This document shows positions 25,339 through 36,215 of a DNA stretch of 64,000 nucleotides, piece by piece. The first letter of the stretch is position 1, and every line of letters starts with the position of its first letter. The DNA lies in the NCBI GenBank assembly GCA_001949185.1, contig BDGG01000010.1, positions 1,497,773-1,561,772 on the forward strand. The letters are read 5' to 3'. The DNA comes from Ramazzottius varieornatus (taxonomy: Eukaryota; Animalia; Tardigrada). The translations under genes and the position numbers were made by a program. The notes under the pieces were generated by a model. That model was given only the letters and a program-made list of their open reading frames with translations. It made no database searches and was not told where the DNA came from.

Positions 25339-27015
25339 TCACAAAGGACCATCTCCAGCACCAGCAGAGAATTTAGTACGAGCCCACTCAATATAATCAG
25401 GCTTAGCCGCTGCTTTATATTCCTGAATCAGATTATTCACTACCTCGCGAGATTCATCCATGTCTTCCAACCCGTTAGCGAACTTCGGCTCTCTTTTGAA
25501 CGCATCCAGGAACGCGCCCTTCTTCTTCAGCTTGTCATACTGCTTTAGCATCGAGTCGAAAAGTACATGGACGCCAGTGTGGTTCGTCATCATCAAGCCG
25601 CTGACGCGATGGTTGGTAGACACGAAGGGGGACTTACGCGAATGAGCCACATGCAGACTGGCGGGTCCCCATTCAATGAAACGAGCGAGCTTCCGCTCTC
25701 GAATACGCTGTAGACTCTTCTGTACCTGTAAGGCAGAATACGGCCGAAGTCAGGTTCGACCCGGAAGTGAACTATACCGGCAGAGTGGCTTACCTCGCCC
25801 GATTCCACCTCGCCCTGAAGAATGTTCAGAATGGAAATGAATGCGTTTTCTGCTTCATTGTACTTCCCCAGTGATGCCATCATGTTCTTAGTTTGAAGGA
25901 GACGACGCATCACATCGAAGACTGTAGTTTTCTGGATGCCACCGGTGCCCTGATCGAGCGATGTCAAGGGCGTATAGCCTATGACATGACATGACATAAC
26001 ATAGAGAGACGTGTCAAGAACACAATGATGAAGAAAAAGTGAAAAACAGATGGAAAACAATATTTTCCCATGGTTTTCAAGAAAGTTCGTACCGGTCATG
26101 ATGAAATGGAGGTTGGGTGTGGGAATGAGCGGAGAGATCAGCGAAATGAGATCGTTGTGCATGTAGCTTGGATAGCGAAGAGTGGAAGTGCTGGCGGACA
26201 TGACGGTGGAGACGATGTTGTTGATTTCGTCGTTTGTGGGCTTCTCGATGCGTAGACGTTCCGCGGCGATGTTATGCAGAGCGGTGTTGTCCATCACCAC
26301 AACACAGTCAGCATGCTCGGCCAGACGACGGAGGGTCAGCATGGAGTTGTACGGACCGACGACGACGTCGCTGTTCTCGTCTTGATTAGGAAAGATGGAG
26401 TACGTCTGAATGATCTTTTTGGGGAAGCGATCGTGAATGTTTTCCAGGACGTAGGAACCCATACCCGAACCTGTACCTCCAGCGATCGAATGGCACAGAC
26501 AAAATCCTTCCAAGCCATCACTCCCGTCTGCTTCTCGATTGATGATATCGAATACTTTCTCCTGCAGGAAAACAAATCATTCAGTAATCAGTATCTCTTA
26601 CTCTATCTTACTTCCTACCGTTTTTCAATTCGGAAATGCGAAAAGCGATGCAGCTTACGGAATGCTGCTCTCCCAGGCGATATCCAGCAGCCCAGTTGTT
26701 TCCTGCTCCTCCACCTTGGTTGTCCATGTAGAGATTCTCGGGGTTATACAGCTTGGCATATTCGGAATTGCGGATGGTATTGATGACTCGGGGCTCCAGA
26801 TCCATAAGAACAGCTCGAGGAATGTAGTGGTCGTCGTCAGCTTGGTAGAAGAAGACATCCTTCCGATCATAGTTTCCTCCTGCTGCTGTCAAAGCTCCGT
26901 TGATCAACCTTCCGTCTGTGTCGATGCCATGCTCCTTGCACAGCTTCTTCCAGAACTCATTCCCGATCTGGTTACCGCACTGGCCTAGCTGCAAAGTAAT
27001 GATCTCACGAGGCAT
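25339..27015 (-). CDS. TUBG1: Gamma-tubulin, multi-exon
   Basis: [87 protein letters not shown]. Confidence 0.97.
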
Positions 27016-27226: not shown

Positions 27227-30200
27227 TAGTGCTGGCAAAAATACGATACAATTCGATACGATATTTTTCGATACAATATCGGCCGATATTTTATCGCGGT
27301 CTTCGATATTCATTCAGTATCGATATTTCGATACGATATTTTTCCGTTACCGTATTTTTGATATATCTTATCATATGGCAGCGATATACCGATATTTCTG
27401 CTATTTTAATTTTTCGGAATTCCACTGGTTTAAGCCCAAGTATAAGTAAGATCAAAAGCTTCGGATTGAGCAAAGACGTGACCATACCAAGACTTTAAAC
27501 ACATGGAAACGTGGACAGAATTAGTTCCAAGACTACATCGCGACTTCGTGATCAGTCTTCCACTTTGAGAAAACCAGCGCTCGGACTCAGACGAAGAAGC
27601 ACAGACAGCAAAAACATCCATCACTGGTTTGCACAAAGTTGGAAATATCTCCCGCCGTTCTTTCCACCACTGCAATGGCTTGCAATCCAGTTCCGGCGCC
27701 GTACCTGAATTGAAAAAGAGATCCTATTTAGCGCGCAGACTGTAAGGCAATTATTCTATCTTTGATGAACCAAGAATATTGCCTAGGTATTTGTCCACTT
27801 CGCTCTGGTCAACACTCGCATTCTTGTTCAGCAGTTTGAGGAACCCACTTCGGATGATGCTGGTAGGCACGGAACTAATTGCTGTCGACTTCGAAATTTG
27901 GTCACTTTCGTTTTTGTAGAGCGCACAGAACTTCTTTAGCAGATCCGATGCTGCAAGCTTGCCCGCCGTGTCTGGCACCAGGCTTGTCTTGATGCAAGGA
28001 TCTAAAAGCTGCGCAACCTTGACCACGTCTTGCTGCCAGGAGTCAGGACTGATACGCGTCAGCTTGTCTTCCATGGATTCTGCAGTCTTTCTCACAATAT
28101 TGGCCTGTAAATAAGTCAAGGAAAAACTACGAACGTGGATAAATACCAAGTACAGAGAAAATTTACATAACTTAAAGCAACCAGATTTACGAAACCTACC
28201 GCCGTTGGAAGTTCTTGGCTTTGTCTAAGGTGAAGAGCCAGACGTGTCAGACAAAGCTTTCCGACATGGAATGTGGGCTCTGCTGCAGCAGAGCAGAGGA
28301 CCGTAATCTGCTTCATAGGCGTCAGGCACTCAATCAGTTCTCTTATTTCGTCCTATTCCTTCTCCAGTAGAAGAGTTTTCTTCATGTCCGTGCTGCCGTG
28401 CAGAGTGAAGTACCTCTTTGAATCGTGACGCATCTCAAAGGCTCCTTCCACTATGTGTAACGTGCTGTTCTAACGGGTCGAACAGTCCAGCGGAAGGCCG
28501 AGCTTCTTCTGTTTGTCGTCAGTGAGCAGACTTCGGAAGATCGTTTTGGGTTTTGGTCTTTTCACGACTTTGATCAACTCGCGCACTCGACCGATCGAGT
28601 TCTTCTCATCTACCACGCCAACCTGACACACTGTATTCACCACATGACTAATACATCGTACTTTGAACTCAGAAACTGTAAGCAGGAAAACGCAACGTCA
28701 ACGTATGTTATTTCCTAGAGAAATGATACCAAGTAATTATAAAGGGAGAAATCGACCATCGTTTCTCACACCGTGGCTTTCTCTCCACTCGCAGTTCAGG
28801 CAAGATGTCTTTAAACAAGGCTGTCATATTTGCTGCACCGTCCACTGTGTGGCCTAGAGTCTTATGAGCAATGTCGTAATCTCTCAAAACTGTCAGAACT
28901 GATTCTCGGCGCTATGTTCGGCAGGTAGATCGACGAAGTCAAGCAGGACTCGGCGCAGCTCAAACTCTTTGGTCACCCAGTGCGCTGTGATAGCCATGTA
29001 TCCTTCTTGCGCTAGTGACGTCCATGGATCCATGGTGAGGGATATCCTTCCAGGTACTTCTGCCAGCTCCTTCGTTATCTACAAATACAACCCAATCGTG
29101 ATCAGATTCTTCTGAATTGATTCTTCAGATTCTTCTGCTACTGGTTCAGACCGTAGCTGTACGAAAAATGTACCAGATTGCGGGAGTTGGGCAAACAAAA
29201 CTATAAAGATCGTTTTCCGGAGTAACGCAGCATTCCAGTCAATGGTAACCATAGCGTGCGTCACTTGGGAAAACAATTCTGTCAAGCTTCTTTCCACGTG
29301 GCGCGCTTTTTACATACTATCATCACGGAGCCTGCGCCGCTTGAGGAATGAACGTACCTTCTCTTTGTATTTTTCGATGTCATCGAACAGCCGAGACTTC
29401 AGAGTGTTTCTGGACGGTACAACATACGAATGGTTCAGAGCCTTAACAAATTCGACAAACTCTTTGTAATCGACCATCGAGAATGGTAAAGAGCAGTTCA
29501 CGATCAGCCGCTTCAGCTTGTCGTCTATTCCTCTGTGGGCTTTCTTTCTTATTGTCGTAATTCCGCAGCCTGCTTCCCCCATCTTTTCACGACACCAGTC
29601 TGGAACTCGTTCCTTCGCACTTTTGCCTTCCAGGACGTTAAGATGAGCCTTCTTCGTATGTTCCGACAGGGGAGCGTTTGGGTTACTGTCAGCGTATTCC
29701 TTCTTACAGTACTTACAACAGTACTTCTTTCTTACGGTATCATGGGTCCAGTGTTGAAAGATAGGCGCTCGCCGCTCAATGTCCTCGGCAGCTTTCCGCT
29801 TCTTCGAAGTCGTGGTTGGAGCTGTGGAGATTTAAGACGCAGCAGGTGATGGTGCTTGAACATACAACTCATCCCTGTCTCGCTCCCGCTCGGCGTCTTC
29901 TTCTTCATGTCGACGAAGATCAGCTTCCAGAGACGTCCGTCGCCCGAACATCCTTTCAATAGTCTTCCTACGAGTATATGATGAGAGGTTTCGAATTCCG
30001 CTAAAGACCGCCGAACAAACTTCCAAGGCTGACAATCGGGAAACTGTAGTATGAAAAATTCGCTATCGATATCCAGCAGAAATGAGATGATCGTGCACGC
30101 ACGCTCCAGCACATGAATACATACGGCCGTAAGATTAGGCTAGGGCAATGAGATCGGTGCTGACGGCACATTCGGCCCAGGACCGAATGGGCGAAGTATG

Positions 30201-30463: not shown

Positions 30464-32001
30464 CGACCAGCGGAAGTTCTTCTTGTCACTAATAACAATA
30501 AGGGCCTTCAAAGACAGACCTGGTTCTGGTGGTGTAATTATCCTGTCTGCTCTGGTGGATACACCCATAAATCAAACAGACCAACCAATGAGCCCCTAAT
30601 CTCCTGACTTTGAACGCCCCGTATTGCCACCGCAAAGCGAGCAGATGTAGTTTTATGCAACTGCTCGATTTCTGTTTTTAGTATTATGTATATGTATCTG
30701 CCCCTCTTTTTATCTTGTTCGACACCATGCCACAAACAAAACCCCTACCCTTCTCTTAAAAATATGGATCGCAGGATGGAGTTGTCTCGTGTCGGTTTCA
30801 GTTTATCGGCAAGTGGACGAACCCTTAAGTGTGTATTTAGCAGTTAACTAGAACATAAAACGAAAAGCATTTTTGAACAAGTAGATAACGTCTTTTATAA
30901 GAGACAGAAGCCTCGTTGAAAGTGAAGGGCAATCATACCCGAACTGGTTTTGATAAAGACAGATCTGAAATCTTCAGCCGCGTCACAACCATCTTCTTCC
31001 CGATGTCGGTGCTAAACTTGGCATCGATGTCCGTCCACTTCCTATTATCAGTCTAAATGGTTAGAAGTAATGGACGTTTCTGAAAGGGACATGTCCATCC
31101 ACATTAACTGGAAAAAAGACACATTAACTGGAAACGAACCAAGGCACACAAGAATATTCTAGACAGGTGAAGGGGAAGTAATGAAACTTGGATTTTTAAA
31201 GGACGTGAGTCTAGAAGTGATGGAAAAATCTAACTTTCATAACGTGACATTACCTACCAACAAACCAACAATCAACAACGAACAACCCTTTTTCAGTAGA
31301 CAAGTTGATTGTGTGATGACACTGACCAGGCCTTCCTCTGGTCAGTGCCGCTTGGTTAGCTTGCTTACCATGGTATTCAACGATCCTCCGCAACACTGTC
31401 ATCTTGGTGTCTTGGGCACCTCTGAATTTGCTGGTTCAGACCGAATAGGCACTGAAGTAGAGATCACTATTCGGGCATCAGAAAGGAAAGATAAGACAGA
31501 AGTAAAGAAGGGAAGATTTAGCAAGGGACGAGATTCACCGAGATGACTCCGGCAAAGCGAAATAGAAACTGAAAATTTCGTCAGCTGGTGGGATTACGAG
31601 TCGGTCCCGAGTAGGTCGTAATTACACCAAAAAACGGTGAAATTTCGTGTTCGGTGGAACGAGTAGCCCAATCGTGTCGTGAGGGTGAAGCCAATTACGT
31701 CAGCGCTGTAATTCCACCAGCGGTGTAATCAGTCTTTGGAGGCCCTTAATAATTCTATGTTCTTGTTCAAAAAGAGTTCCTGCAACAGCTATCTGCTGTG
31801 ATGCAGTATAGCAGCAACATCTTGCCGATGAAAAAAAAGCTCTGCAGGATATTGGGAAGCAAAAGCCTATGAAGGTTCAGATTAGAATGACATCTTTGGT
31901 TGAATACAACAAAAGTTGGCCACAGAAAGAAAGACGAGGAGAAACTAGGAAAAAATCCCTACGCTCTAAGACAGTCTGATACATCGACAGCACTTCCAGC
32001 C

Positions 32002-33187
32002 TTATTTGTGGTGCATCTTGAAATACTCTCGAGAGTCGTCGGGGCTGGGCATGATCGTGGGTTTGCCGACATTCCAGTCAGCCGGACAGACATCTCCGTA
32101 TTCGCTTTGGTACTGAAGAGCTTCGAGGACTCGCTTGGTTTCATCGACAGAGCGTCCTACACCTAGGTCGTGAACAGCAGCATGGCGGACGATACCCTTC
32201 GGATCGATGACGAACAGGGCACTGTAACAAATGTTGCCTTAGAGATGACTGCGAGTTTGATAGTACAGAACGAATTACCGAGCGGAATGTCCCGAGCTCT
32301 CGTCAAAGACTCCATAATCCTTCGATATGTTATGAGTGACATCAGATAACAAGGGAATCCGAACATTTCCAAGTCCACCTTTATCTCGAGACACGTTTGT
32401 CCTGTAAAACAGAAAACATTTCGATCAGTCACAGACAACTTCCGGTTGGCAATACGGTAACGTTATAGCTGTTGGCGGCGAATTACCAGGCCAAGTGGGA
32501 GTATTTCGAGTCGACAGAGATGGCAAGGATTTCTGTGACCAAGTCCCTAAACTCGGCTGCACGCTCCGAGAAGGCAATAATCTCGGTGGGTTCAACCTGG
32601 GAAACAGACAGCCGTGTGGGCAATTAAGCCCTCACTCGATTACAGAACGATCTGGAATCTGGAGCCGTTAAATACAGCGCTGAAGTTAGGAAAGAGAAAC
32701 TTACAAATGTGAAGTCTTGTGGATAGAACAATAGAATAACGTATTTTCCATAATACGTTTTGAGGCTGACATCTCTGGAGAAATTTTCAGTCAGGGAACA
32801 CACAAAGAAAGTTCGAGACACATCAGGGACTGTCTTACTTGAAAACTCCGTTCACGACCGCAGGAACGTCGTCGAAGGCCGGGGCTGGTTTGCCAACTAA
32901 AACACAGATCGCGCATCTCTGGATGAGTGAACCGGACAGAAGAGCGAACAGTCAGCCCGTCACGACCATGATCTCATGAGCCGCATTTTACCGTACCTTG
33001 AGCAGCCGATGTGTAAATGCGATGATCACCAGCGCACTCTGATCGTGGACGTCCGTCGCCGTGGCCGTTAGTGGCTCCTGTACTCGTGCCCGGCTGTGGA
33101 GAATCCGCACCTGCACATATCAAAAGTCACCCTAAGCAACTATGTTGCAGAAGGAAGAGACTTACGCTTTCGCTTGAAGCTCGACAT
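32002..33187 (-). CDS. Typical 2-Cys (AhpC/Prx1) peroxiredoxin-like protein with peroxidatic Cys replaced by Glu; 7 exons
   Basis: Spliced: [104 protein letters not shown]...SVDSKYSHLAWTNVSRDKGGLG...GRSVDETKRVLEALQY...GDVCPADW...SREYFKMHHK*. All introns are GT-AG and the frame is open. Confidence 0.93.
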
Positions 33188-33902
33188 CGTGAGGATAGGG
33201 AATATCGGATTACGTGTAGACTGCAGAGGCGCTAGCGGAGACAGATGTGCTCCCAGGAAAAGCACCACTCTAACACCGATCACATTAATCCTCTGCCGGC
33301 CTACACACCTCGTCCGACGATGAGATACAAGGTAGTGAAACGGGAGGACAATGGTGAGTATTCGTCCTGCGCCGACGATTATGATACAACGACGATGGCT
33401 GCTCCACGTCATCAAAAACGGGAGGAGAGTGCCTCTATTGTAATCGTATTGCTATCGTATGACGATACTTTGCCAAAGTGTCGTCATGCACTTCGAGTGC
33501 TCATCGATCCTCTTCCAGATCACCCACATGGTCAAGCTTGGTATCAAAATGTAGGGAAATCATCCCTCTACATCTTGATACCTTCCGGGAACGAGTGAAC
33601 TGCGTCCCAGCTGACCAGACTTGAATTTAGCGAGAGGGGGCGAAAATGGATGAAATCAGCCATTTTTTGCCATTCCGCAGCTAATCATTCCGCAGGGTGT
33701 GACATCACTCTGCGTATGCCAGTGCTTCCAGCGGCGGTGACGGAGCGAATCCTATCGTTTCGAAGTCGTCTCGGGATCGCCGAATACCCAAAGCTCTTTG
33801 CGATGCGAAGTCGATACGACTTCTATTGCGGTTGAATGACTTGTATCGTAATCGTGGTCGTTGGCAGAGGACGAATACTCTCTAATGTCAATGGGTAAGT
33901 TT

Positions 33903-34188: not shown

Positions 34189-34808
34189 CTAAGTTTCCTC
34201 AGCACGAAGGCAACGAGACATGAAAAACTGAAAATGGATAACCAAAATAAAAGGAAGTGCCCTCGGGGGGAATTTTGATCGCCTGGCTACAGTTTTCCAT
34301 GTATACCGCGAGGCCTGCGCAGGCGCCGAAATTATCCAAACGTTGGCAGGGCAAACGGTGAACGCACACGAGATCTTGCGCTTGAAAAGAACGATATTCC
34401 CCGCAGGCCTTCCCGCTTGGGCAGTTTTGTTATTTTCGAGGTTCCAACTTCTCGAATTCCTCCATCAGCTTGCTGATCATCAAACTATCTGTCACCCCAC
34501 AAAATCCGATTTGCCACCATATTGACGTTTTTGCGAGAGCTATAGGAAGACTCATTAGAGCACAGCACGTCTTTAATCGCGTCCCATTTGGCAGGAGTTT
34601 CCGACTAGATACCGAGTTCGGAACTCGCTTGTTTCCGATACCGGTTCAGTATGGTCATCGTTACTACGGAACATCCAAGCTCACGTGCAAAAGAGCTAGT
34701 GTCGCGCAAAACAAAACATGGAGATGGTGGAGCTTCTTAGAAGGCGAAAAAGCCAATGCTTTAGCATCGTGTTAGCATCTCAATGCGCAGTTGACCGTGG
34801 ACCTGGTG

Positions 34809-36215
34809 ATGAAGCGACATTTTATACATTTGACAAACCGCGGTGATCAGCCATGCGCCGGAGATGACCTTGTGCAGCCGAATCGACCTCGTAGAATTCA
34901 GTTTCAGGAGCCGGTAAAAGATGGTGTACAGCCAGACAAGGCTAATGACAAGAGCCTTCAGCCTCCGGGGGCGGAAAATTCCGAACAAGCGCTATTAACA
35001 GACTGGCCCCACGTGCCGGAACTCACTGTTCTACACGCCGATGGAGAAGACCCTTTCCCGTTATTTCAGCCATCACTCTGCCGATACTTTGACGAGGATG
35101 ACCACCATGTGGTTCATCACAAAGAGTATGACGCACCTGCTGGTGATCAGAAACACACGGAAGTCGACATATCGTATAATCAAAGCGCCGCTCTCGTCGA
35201 CAAAAAGTACGCGTACACCTATAAGGGTTTCATAAAAGACATGTATTACTTCTTCCGTCCAGCTGCAGACTCTGGCGATGATGAGCAGGATGACATAGAG
35301 TTGGCGGACGAGGTGAACAAGCAAATCTTATCGGCAATGGTCGGCGGCGGTGACGCGCCGGAGATGATCAATGGCGCTTTAGGCGAACCCGATGGATGGG
35401 ATGAGGACGACCATTCGCCGACCTTCTGGAGTTACAGGATGCGGGAAATTGATTACTTTATCAAACATAATGTATGGTCAGTCGATCCAGTCGGAGACTG
35501 GTCTTACTTGAACTACAACAAGGTACCACCGGATTTTTTACGAAAAGTACGCCGGTACTTCGAGATCCGACCGCTGGAGTACCTTTACGATACTGGTTCG
35601 TACCGGATCTATCACGTGCTGAATCAGTATAAAGACTTGCACCGAATCGTCGATGACTCAAGGACTTCAGTTACTCGCACACTGATCGGATGTCAACAGT
35701 GCGTAGCGGGTTGGGCTGTCGGGAATGATACCGTGGAAGCTGCTCGCAAGATGGAACTTGTATGGCTATAAGGTCAGAATGCGTTACGAAGGTTTAATAC
35801 TGCTGTTGAATTGTAGGATTACCTGGCTATGATATGGTTGTCCATATGGGATCCCAGACTCAAAGCCAACATTTTCCAGCTGAAAGAGATGTCAATGAGC
35901 GACTGGTTCTTCACGCGCGTTGGGTGGGGATCCGCCGTTGGAGTGCGAGACCTACTGATCAAGTCGGAAGTTCACGGTAGCTTCGACTTCTGGGAACACC
36001 GAGCAGCAGCGGAGGATGAAGACGAGGAAGCCGAGTTCGAAGAGCTGAAAGACTGGATAACCGGTGAAGATGAAGAGCCGCAGTCCGGGTTTTTCCAGAC
36101 GCCAAGTACCCAGACCGGTCAACTGGGTCCTTCGTCCTTACAGAATCTCGGAAGTCAGACAGGGAATAAGAGTGTTAGTTCGATCGTCAACGAGCAAAAC
36201 GAAACTGCGGTTTAG
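34809..36215 (+). CDS. Orphan/uncharacterised acidic protein (~450 aa), 2 exons (34809-35759, 35817-36215)
   Basis: Long open frame; a 57-bp phase-0 GT-AG intron (35760-35816) joins KMEL|DYLAMIW in frame. No family recognised. Extra upstream exons are possible. Confidence 0.7.

What the first reader, a model, noticed from the sequence alone, without database searches (positions are those of the whole stretch)
32002..33187. Intact peroxiredoxin with the peroxidatic Cys replaced by Glu, plus an NLS-like disordered N-terminal tail
Seen: the invariant Prx1/AhpC motif PxDFTFVCPTE reads [11 protein letters not shown] (GAA at 32591-32593, three nucleotide changes away from TGY, so not a single sequencing error). 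The gene is otherwise intact over 7 GT-AG exons and keeps the catalytic Arg region, GGLG, the resolving Cys (DVCPADW) and the C-terminal YF motif. It also has a ~45-aa low-complexity N-terminal extension starting MSSFKRKR. Known: hyperoxidation of the peroxidatic Cys to sulfinic/sulfonic acid switches 2-Cys Prx from peroxidase to high-molecular-weight chaperone, and acidic substitutions are used to mimic this state. Inference: a genetically locked, possibly nuclear, holdase or non-canonical antioxidant Prx, which would suit a desiccation/radiation-tolerant animal. I recall a Cys-to-Glu Prx-like protein being reported from a tardigrade, so it may not be entirely new; I cannot verify that here.
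Basis: partly seen in the sequence, partly recalled or inferred. Interest (0 to 1): 0.9.

Follow-up and report, generated by a model that had tools for sequence, protein, structure and literature searches.

The report
Known tardigrade dead peroxiredoxin RvPrxL

Summary
On the minus strand at 32002-33187 lies an intact 7-exon, all GT-AG gene for a 238-aa typical 2-Cys peroxiredoxin. Glu90 (GAA, 32591-32593) replaces the peroxidatic Cys in FTF|VEPTE. Pro83, Thr87, Arg166, GGLG, the resolving Cys211 and the YF motif are kept. The tail starts MSSFKRKR.

Spliced transcript contigs from four runs of four studies show all six joints and no base differences.

The gene is not new. It is RvPrxL (RvY_14602, GAV04299.1) of Ramazzottius varieornatus, described in bioRxiv 10.64898/2026.04.10.717662. 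The preprint's cloning primers, NLS peptides, residue numbers and protein size match my model exactly.

That preprint reports:
- no peroxidase and no holdase activity;
- a stacked 20-mer of two decamer rings;
- KRKR-dependent nuclear localisation;
- KRKR-dependent binding of DNA and RNA.

- five other 2-Cys Prx paralogues in the genome keep VCPTE;
- RvPrxL shares two intron positions with the KADL-ended Prx4 paralogue;
- its core is only about 57% identical to Prx4 proteins that are about 81% identical to each other, yet it keeps 59 of 68 near-invariant columns.

The scan has a note on that Prx4 paralogue elsewhere in this genome, but none on this gene.

The parts
33166..33187 (-). Exon 1: start codon (33187-33185) and MSSFKRK plus the first base of Arg8; carries most of the KRKR nuclear localisation and nucleic-acid-binding motif.
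   Evidence: The preprint's forward primer spans this exon and exon 2. Joint 33166/33110 stands in 4 runs.
32997..33110 (-). Exon 2: rest of Arg8 and the basic, low-complexity N-terminal tail (residues 8-45), including Cys33.
   Evidence: joints. No significant Pfam match (best E 0.039, below cut-off).
32839..32896 (-). Exon 3: start of the Prx core ([20 protein letters not shown]).
32705..32774 (-). Exon 4: [23 protein letters not shown], with Pro83 and Thr87 of the PxxxTxxC active-site motif.
   Evidence: Pfam AhpC-TSA E 1.2e-4; joint 32705/32596 in 4 runs.
32487..32596 (-). Exon 5: [16 protein letters not shown]...HLA(W); holds the substituted peroxidatic position.
   Evidence: Pfam AhpC-TSA E 6.8e-5.
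32591..32593 (-). Codon 90, GAA = Glu, at the place of the peroxidatic Cys.
   Evidence: No other letters in contigs of 4 runs. 120 of 125 aligned Prx4-like proteins have Cys here; the 5 others are broken gene models.
32279..32401 (-). Exon 6: TNVSRDKGGLGNVRIPLLSD...; GGLG motif at 32368-32379; first two bases of Arg166.
32002..32221 (-). Exon 7: the third base of the Arg166 codon, VGRSVDE, resolving Cys211 (32086-32088), YF motif (32020-32025), stop TAA (32002-32004).
   Evidence: Pfam 1-cysPrx_C E 8.7e-9. Best solved-structure match is human Prx2, E 2.2e-22. The preprint's reverse primer equals 32002-32031.
32597..32704 (-). Intron 4 (108 nt), between FTF and VEPTE; retained in low-depth contigs of two runs. 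Read through, it hits a stop (TAA).
   Evidence: records 2 and 5, colinear over 32567-32732.
33188..33300 (-). 5' leader covered by transcript contigs, which run on beyond 33300.
   Evidence: records 3, 6, 14 run over the end by 52, 110 and 190 letters.
31900..32001 (-). 3' untranslated region covered by transcript contigs, which run on beyond 31900.
   Evidence: record 14 has 177 further letters.

Best explanation
The gene is RvPrxL (RvY_14602, GAV04299.1) of the tardigrade Ramazzottius varieornatus. It is a duplicate of a Prx4-type typical 2-Cys peroxiredoxin that has lost catalysis, with Glu90 in place of the peroxidatic Cys, and has gained a basic N-terminal tail carrying KRKR.

Reported in the preprint (not tested here): the protein keeps the Prx fold and decamer ring, and stacks two rings into a 20-mer under ambient conditions. 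The authors suggest this may be because Glu90 naturally mimics the hyperoxidised Cys-SO2H state. It has no peroxidase and no holdase activity. The KRKR motif takes it into the nucleus in HEK293T cells and is needed for binding dsDNA, tRNA and U3 and U6 RNAs. Nucleic acid sits either on the ring or inside its central cavity, and DNA is partly protected from DNase.

Inferred: in the animal it acts as an oxidation-resistant nuclear scaffold or cage for nucleic acids. The preprint cites transcriptome data showing it is most abundant in embryos.
For: Identity with RvPrxL:
- The preprint's forward primer equals spliced CDS 1-40 and is absent from the genomic window, so it spans the exon 1/2 joint. 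Its reverse primer equals window 32002-32031.
- The preprint's NLS peptides [10 protein letters not shown] and [13 protein letters not shown] sit at residues 2-11 and 3-15 of my model.
- Length 238 aa, Glu90, Ala102, exactly two Cys and 26.2 kDa all match.
- The assembly has 55.84 Mb in 200 contigs.

Gene intact and expressed:
- six joints in four studies, with no differing letters.

Constraint:
- 59 of 68 columns that are at least 95% conserved in 125 Prx4-like proteins are kept. The only radical catalytic change is C90E.

Divergence:
- Core identity to a 12-protein Prx4-like panel drawn from a range of animal groups is about 57%, against a median of 81% within the panel.

Origin:
- Five other 2-Cys paralogues in the genome keep VCPTE.
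- The KADL-ended Prx4 paralogue shares the FTF|V and Trp (tg|g) intron positions.

Function:
-, all from bioRxiv 10.64898/2026.04.10.717662.
Against: All functional evidence comes from one preprint that is not peer reviewed. It uses recombinant protein, human cells and E. coli lysate; nothing was done in tardigrades.

Nucleic-acid binding through a basic tail may be non-specific, and DNase protection was only partial.

Holdase activity was tested with a single client, reduced lysozyme.

I could not retrieve orthologues. I therefore could not test whether the Glu is limited to this species or measure dN/dS.
Confidence: 0.87

Rival explanations
1. One reading: a genetically locked high-molecular-weight chaperone (holdase) or non-canonical antioxidant, in which Glu90 freezes the protein in the hyperoxidised chaperone form.
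For: The preprint notes that substituting CysP with a carboxyl-containing residue is used to mimic the hyperoxidised state. It also notes that a CysP-to-Asp mutation enhances ring stacking in S. mansoni Prx1. RvPrxL stacks at pH 8 without stress. GGLG and YF are retained.
Against: RvPrxL did not suppress aggregation of reduced lysozyme at 10-20 uM. Its H2O2 consumption was about twice that of free cysteine. The stacking geometry also differs from that of known chaperone-form Prx filaments.
Confidence: 0.07
2. A non-catalytic subunit or regulator that acts on other proteins. It might co-assemble with active Prx paralogues, or use Cys211 and Cys33 as a redox relay or sensor in the nucleus. Nucleic-acid binding would then be incidental.
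For: Resolving Cys211, Arg166, Thr87 and Pro83 are still conserved although catalysis is gone. The genome holds at least five active-looking 2-Cys paralogues. The oligomer without its N-terminal tail falls to dimers in H2O2.
Against: There is no evidence for hetero-oligomers. The recombinant protein forms homomeric 20-mers on its own. None of the paralogue stretches matched aligned to the KRKR tail, though their N-termini were not examined. The conserved residues may simply be kept for the fold.
Confidence: 0.04
3. A decaying duplicate: a transcribed gene on its way to becoming a pseudogene, with no selected function.
For: Catalysis is lost. Divergence is much faster than in Prx4 orthologues (57% against 81%). 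Redundant paralogues exist.
Against: The 238-codon frame is intact across 7 exons with canonical splice sites. Spliced transcripts occur in four studies. 87% of near-invariant columns are kept, and most other changes are conservative. The protein forms an ordered 20-mer solved at 2.65 A.
Confidence: 0.02

Closest known systems
RvPrxL (RvY_14602, GAV04299.1), Ramazzottius varieornatus; bioRxiv 10.64898/2026.04.10.717662
   Same: It is the same gene. Primers, NLS peptides, length, Glu90, Ala102, Cys count and mass all match.
   Different: Nothing differs in the sequence features I could compare.
Peroxiredoxin-4 type typical 2-Cys Prx (for example Priapulus caudatus peroxiredoxin-4-like P0216, human PRDX4, and the KADL-ended R. 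varieornatus paralogue on contig C1)
   Same: AhpC-TSA plus 1-cysPrx_C domains; PxxxTxx- motif, Arg, GGLG, resolving VCP Cys and YF. Best full-length matches are 52-58% identical. The C1 paralogue has the same two intron positions.
   Different: Glu replaces the peroxidatic Cys. A basic KRKR tail replaces the secretory signal peptide. There is no ER-retention tail. The preprint reports nuclear location and no peroxidase activity. It has diverged much faster.
Engineered hyperoxidation mimics (peroxidatic Cys to Asp or Glu, for example Schistosoma mansoni Prx1 C48D) and hyperoxidised 2-Cys Prx chaperone stacks
   Same: A carboxylate sits at the peroxidatic position, and decamer rings stack readily.
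   Different: The substitution is natural, not engineered. The stacking interface differs: alpha6 tail-to-tail contact with a 41 degree ring rotation. The preprint found no holdase activity.
Human PRDX1 as an RNA- and DNA-binding protein (snoRNA binding, nuclease protection), as cited by the preprint
   Same: A Prx scaffold that binds nucleic acids, including U3 snoRNA.
   Different: PRDX1 remains an active peroxidase and has no KRKR tail. In RvPrxL, binding depends on the added tail and catalysis is gone.

Membership tests
Typical 2-Cys peroxiredoxin (Prx1/AhpC subfamily), as a homology family | AhpC-TSA thioredoxin-fold domain followed by the 1-cysPrx_C C-terminal domain | tested here: met
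   Exon-wise Pfam: PF00578 on exons 4, 5 and 6 in consecutive profile ranges 17-39, 42-74 and 82-105; PF10417 on exon 7 above its cut-off. Exon 7 matches human Prx2 in solved structures at E 2.2e-22.
Typical 2-Cys peroxiredoxin, as an enzyme | Peroxidatic Cys in the PxxxTxxC motif | tested here: not met
   The motif reads P83-Q-D-F-T87-F-V-E90, with GAA at 32591-32593, unchanged in RNA-derived contigs.
Typical 2-Cys peroxiredoxin, as an enzyme | Conserved active-site Arg and resolving Cys in the C-terminal VCP motif | tested here: met
   Arg166 (SARALFVID) and Cys211 (GDVCPADW).
Typical 2-Cys peroxiredoxin, as an enzyme | Thiol-dependent peroxidase activity | not testable with these tools
   The preprint reports none in FOX and A240 assays.
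Eukaryotic hyperoxidation-sensitive 2-Cys Prx | GGLG and C-terminal YF motifs | tested here: met
   G133-G-L-G136 and Y232-F233.
Typical 2-Cys peroxiredoxin | Decameric (alpha2)5 ring assembly | not testable with these tools
   The preprint reports two stacked decamers by cryo-EM at 2.65 A. The joined protein could not be sent to the structure tools.
Peroxiredoxin-4 subtype | N-terminal secretory signal peptide and ER residence | tested here: not met
   The N-terminus is [15 protein letters not shown]..., polar and basic (pI 10.0) with no hydrophobic core, judged by eye. No signal-peptide predictor was available. The canonical paralogue on C1 ends in KADL.
RvPrxL (the published protein) | Sequence landmarks given in the preprint: cloning primers, NLS peptides, 238 aa, Glu90, Ala102, two Cys, 26 kDa | tested here: met

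The most novel reading that the evidence does not exclude
Transcript contigs run well upstream of the annotated start (52-190 letters beyond 33300). An in-frame ATG lies at 33412, and the frame stays open over the 75 codons from that ATG to the annotated ATG. If the contigs are colinear there and this ATG is used, a 313-aa isoform would carry a hydrophobic 75-aa extension in front of KRKR. That could change targeting, away from the nucleus. Alternatively the upstream ATGs (33487, 33412, 33285) could act as uORF-type translational control of RvPrxL. Neither possibility is addressed in the preprint, which cloned from the annotated ATG.
Probability: 0.07. Interest if true: 0.45.

Novelty: already known. 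Interest (0 to 1): 0.25.

Why it matters
RvPrxL is a clear natural case of an antioxidant enzyme scaffold repurposed after loss of its catalytic residue. It shows that the "expanded antioxidant gene families" of anhydrobiotic tardigrades are not all detoxifying enzymes. That point has already been made, with cryo-EM structures and biochemistry, in the 2026 preprint, so the scan's finding adds no new biology.

What is still open:
- its role in the animal;
- its RNA or DNA partners in embryonic nuclei;
- whether Glu is specific to Ramazzottius;
- where its transcripts start.

Tried and rejected
- **Joined protein.** The 238-aa joined protein was never typed or sent to any database, fold or complex tool. 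Searches were done exon by exon by reference. The joined model existed only inside local scripts built from window.fa. Structure prediction of the whole protein was therefore left out.
- **Orthologues.** A representative search with exon 7 gave only generic Prx at 63% identity or less.
- A word search with exon 7 gave three short fragments. One of them, P0153, is 77% identical over 61% of the query and is probably the C-terminal half of a tardigrade orthologue, but it lacks the peroxidatic region.
- A profile of the exon pieces laid on a Hydractinia Prx4-like scaffold returned only relatives of the scaffold in its top 120.
- The open frame containing exon 5 found one generic VCPTE fragment. 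A first try at 37 aa was under the size limit.
- The metagenome scan gave only generic Prx at 53% or less.
- As a result there was no dN/dS and no direct check of Cys against Glu in H. exemplaris or P. metropolitanus. The preprint's Fig. 1B legend implies these have Cys.
- **Solved structures.** The preprint's entries (23PU, 23PV, 23TW) are not in the copy searched. The best match was human Prx2.
- **Alternative VCP exon, editing or polymorphism at codon 90.** Rejected: four runs show no differing letters and only the one joint.
- **Pfam on the upstream in-frame ORF and the opposite-strand ORF** (33188-33412 minus, 33245-33595 plus): no family.

Full report
**What is in the sequence.**
The minus strand of 32002-33187 carries a seven-exon gene: 33187-33166, 33110-32997, 32896-32839, 32774-32705, 32596-32487, 32401-32279 and 32221-32002. 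Every intron begins GT and ends AG. The exons sum to 717 nt, giving 238 codons plus TAA.

Exon 4 ends ...YPQDFTF and exon 5 begins VEPTE. Codon 90 is GAA at 32593-32591, three base changes from TGT or TGC. Pro83, Thr87, Arg166, GGLG (133-136), the resolving Cys211 in DVCPADW and Y232-F233 are all present. The only Cys residues are 33 and 211.

The first 33 residues ([15 protein letters not shown]...) are basic, with pI 10.0; the rest has pI 5.7. Scanned exon by exon, Pfam places AhpC-TSA on exons 4-6 in consecutive profile ranges and 1-cysPrx_C on exon 7. Exon 7 matches human Prx2 among solved structures at E 2.2e-22.

**RNA support.**
Contigs of four public runs from four different studies were laid on 31900-33300. 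They show all six joints at exactly the modelled positions (CT..AC on the plus strand). No differing letters, insertions or deletions were seen.

One 1299-letter contig (X6) carries the whole spliced message. The runs are only guessed to be RNA, but the intron-less joined forms are transcript-derived. Two runs also hold a low-depth 166-letter contig that is colinear across intron 4 (32567-32732). This is unspliced RNA or DNA carry-over, and read through it meets a stop. No alternative exon offering VCP was seen.

**What it is.**
A paper search for "tardigrade" and "peroxiredoxin" returned bioRxiv 10.64898/2026.04.10.717662 (Yamato, Fukuda, Obana, Fujio, Inoue; first posted April 2026) on RvPrxL. 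This is gene RvY_14602, GenBank GAV04299.1, of Ramazzottius varieornatus YOKOZUNA-1.

The identity is exact:
- The preprint's forward cloning primer equals positions 1-40 of my spliced CDS. It does not occur in the genomic window, so it spans the exon 1/2 joint.
- Its reverse primer equals window 32002-32031.
- Its predicted NLS peptides [10 protein letters not shown] and [13 protein letters not shown] sit at residues 2-11 and 3-15.
- Length 238 aa, Glu90, Ala102, "two cysteine residues" and a 26 kDa monomer all agree.
- The assembly has 55.84 Mb in 200 contigs.

**How it works, according to the preprint (not tested here).**
- RvPrxL consumes H2O2 only about twice as fast as free cysteine and does not suppress aggregation of reduced lysozyme. 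It is therefore neither a peroxidase nor a holdase.
- Cryo-EM at 2.65 A shows two stacked decamer rings with a new stacking geometry. Glu90 sits where the peroxidatic Cys sits in other Prx. The authors suggest that it mimics the hyperoxidised state and favours stacking.
- The N-terminal 33 residues keep the assembly intact in 100 mM H2O2.
- They drive nuclear localisation in HEK293T cells through KRKR.
- They are required for binding dsDNA, tRNA, and U3 and U6 RNAs.
- Nucleic acid is seen either on the ring or inside it, and DNA is partly protected from DNase.
- The physiological role is left open. The authors cite transcriptome data showing highest abundance in embryos.

- The genome holds at least five other typical 2-Cys Prx loci (two on C2, and one each on C6, C18 and C1). 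All read VCPTE at the peroxidatic site.
- The C1 paralogue ends in ...TKADL. This agrees with an earlier scan note, s1-795953. It shares with RvPrxL the phase-0 intron between FTF and V, and the intron that splits the Trp codon of HLAW.
- Together with best full-length matches to Prx4-like proteins, this points to a Prx4-type origin.
- In an alignment with 125 Prx4-like proteins, 68 columns are at least 95% conserved. RvPrxL keeps 59 of them. Of its nine deviations, six are conservative (V78I, G167A, I170V, L197V, E209D, N183H). The other three are C90E, P186G and P217V. C90E is the only catalytic residue among the nine.
- The Prx core is nevertheless only about 57% identical to a 12-protein Prx4-like panel drawn from a range of animal groups. 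Members of that panel are a median 81% identical to each other.
- The protein has therefore evolved fast while keeping the fold-defining positions. That fits change of function better than decay.

**Limits.**
The joined protein was not sent to any search, fold or complex tool; only exon references were used.

Orthologues from other tardigrades could not be retrieved. I could not verify that H. exemplaris and P. metropolitanus keep Cys, which the preprint's Fig. 1B legend implies, and I could not compute dN/dS.

**Verdict.**
The finding is already known, so the interest score is low despite the appealing biology.

Noticed in passing
window 33188-33490, minus strand: The RvPrxL 5' leader holds upstream ATGs. 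The one at 33412 is in frame, and the frame stays open over the 75 codons from it to the annotated start. Its context is weak (T at -3), against A at -3 for the annotated ATG. The ATG at 33487 is in frame but has an 11-codon ORF, and the one at 33285 is an ATG-stop mini-uORF. Transcript contigs run 52, 110 and 190 letters beyond 33300, but I could not check that they stay colinear. A 117-codon ORF lies on the opposite strand (33245-33598). Neither ORF has a Pfam match.
   Followed up: partly
window 32597-32704 (intron 4): Two runs (X1, X3) hold a 166-letter contig colinear across intron 4, at about a quarter to a third of the depth of the spliced contigs. This is retained intron or DNA carry-over. 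Read through, it ends in a stop after FTFVSFSF...RVRA.
   Followed up: partly
window 27430-27672 (minus), with neighbouring ORFs up to about 30100: Remnant of a hAT-family transposon about 4.3 kb downstream of RvPrxL. The hAT C-terminal dimerisation domain matches at E 1.6e-14. Adjacent ORFs at 27751-28149 and 29310-29582 have no Pfam match.
   Followed up: partly
window 25593-27015 (minus): Tubulin gene in at least two exons: Tubulin GTPase domain at E 5.7e-26 and Tubulin_C. The N-terminus [18 protein letters not shown] looks like gamma-tubulin by eye; the subtype was not tested.
   Followed up: partly
L008 (G000:C1:2720620-2723775): Canonical Prx4-type paralogue with VCPTE and a charged C-terminal extension ending in KADL. 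It shares two intron positions with RvPrxL. It is the same gene as earlier scan note s1-795953.
   Followed up: partly
P0153 (77 aa, from a 104.7-kb ENA contig): Fragment 77% identical to RvPrxL exons 6-7, without the intron between them, ending GDVW. It is probably the orthologue in another tardigrade assembly with a different exon structure.
   Followed up: no
window 34791-36215 (plus): Two long ORFs (326 and 128 aa) rich in acidic residues, with no Pfam match. Probably exons of an unannotated or lineage-specific gene upstream of RvPrxL.
   Followed up: no
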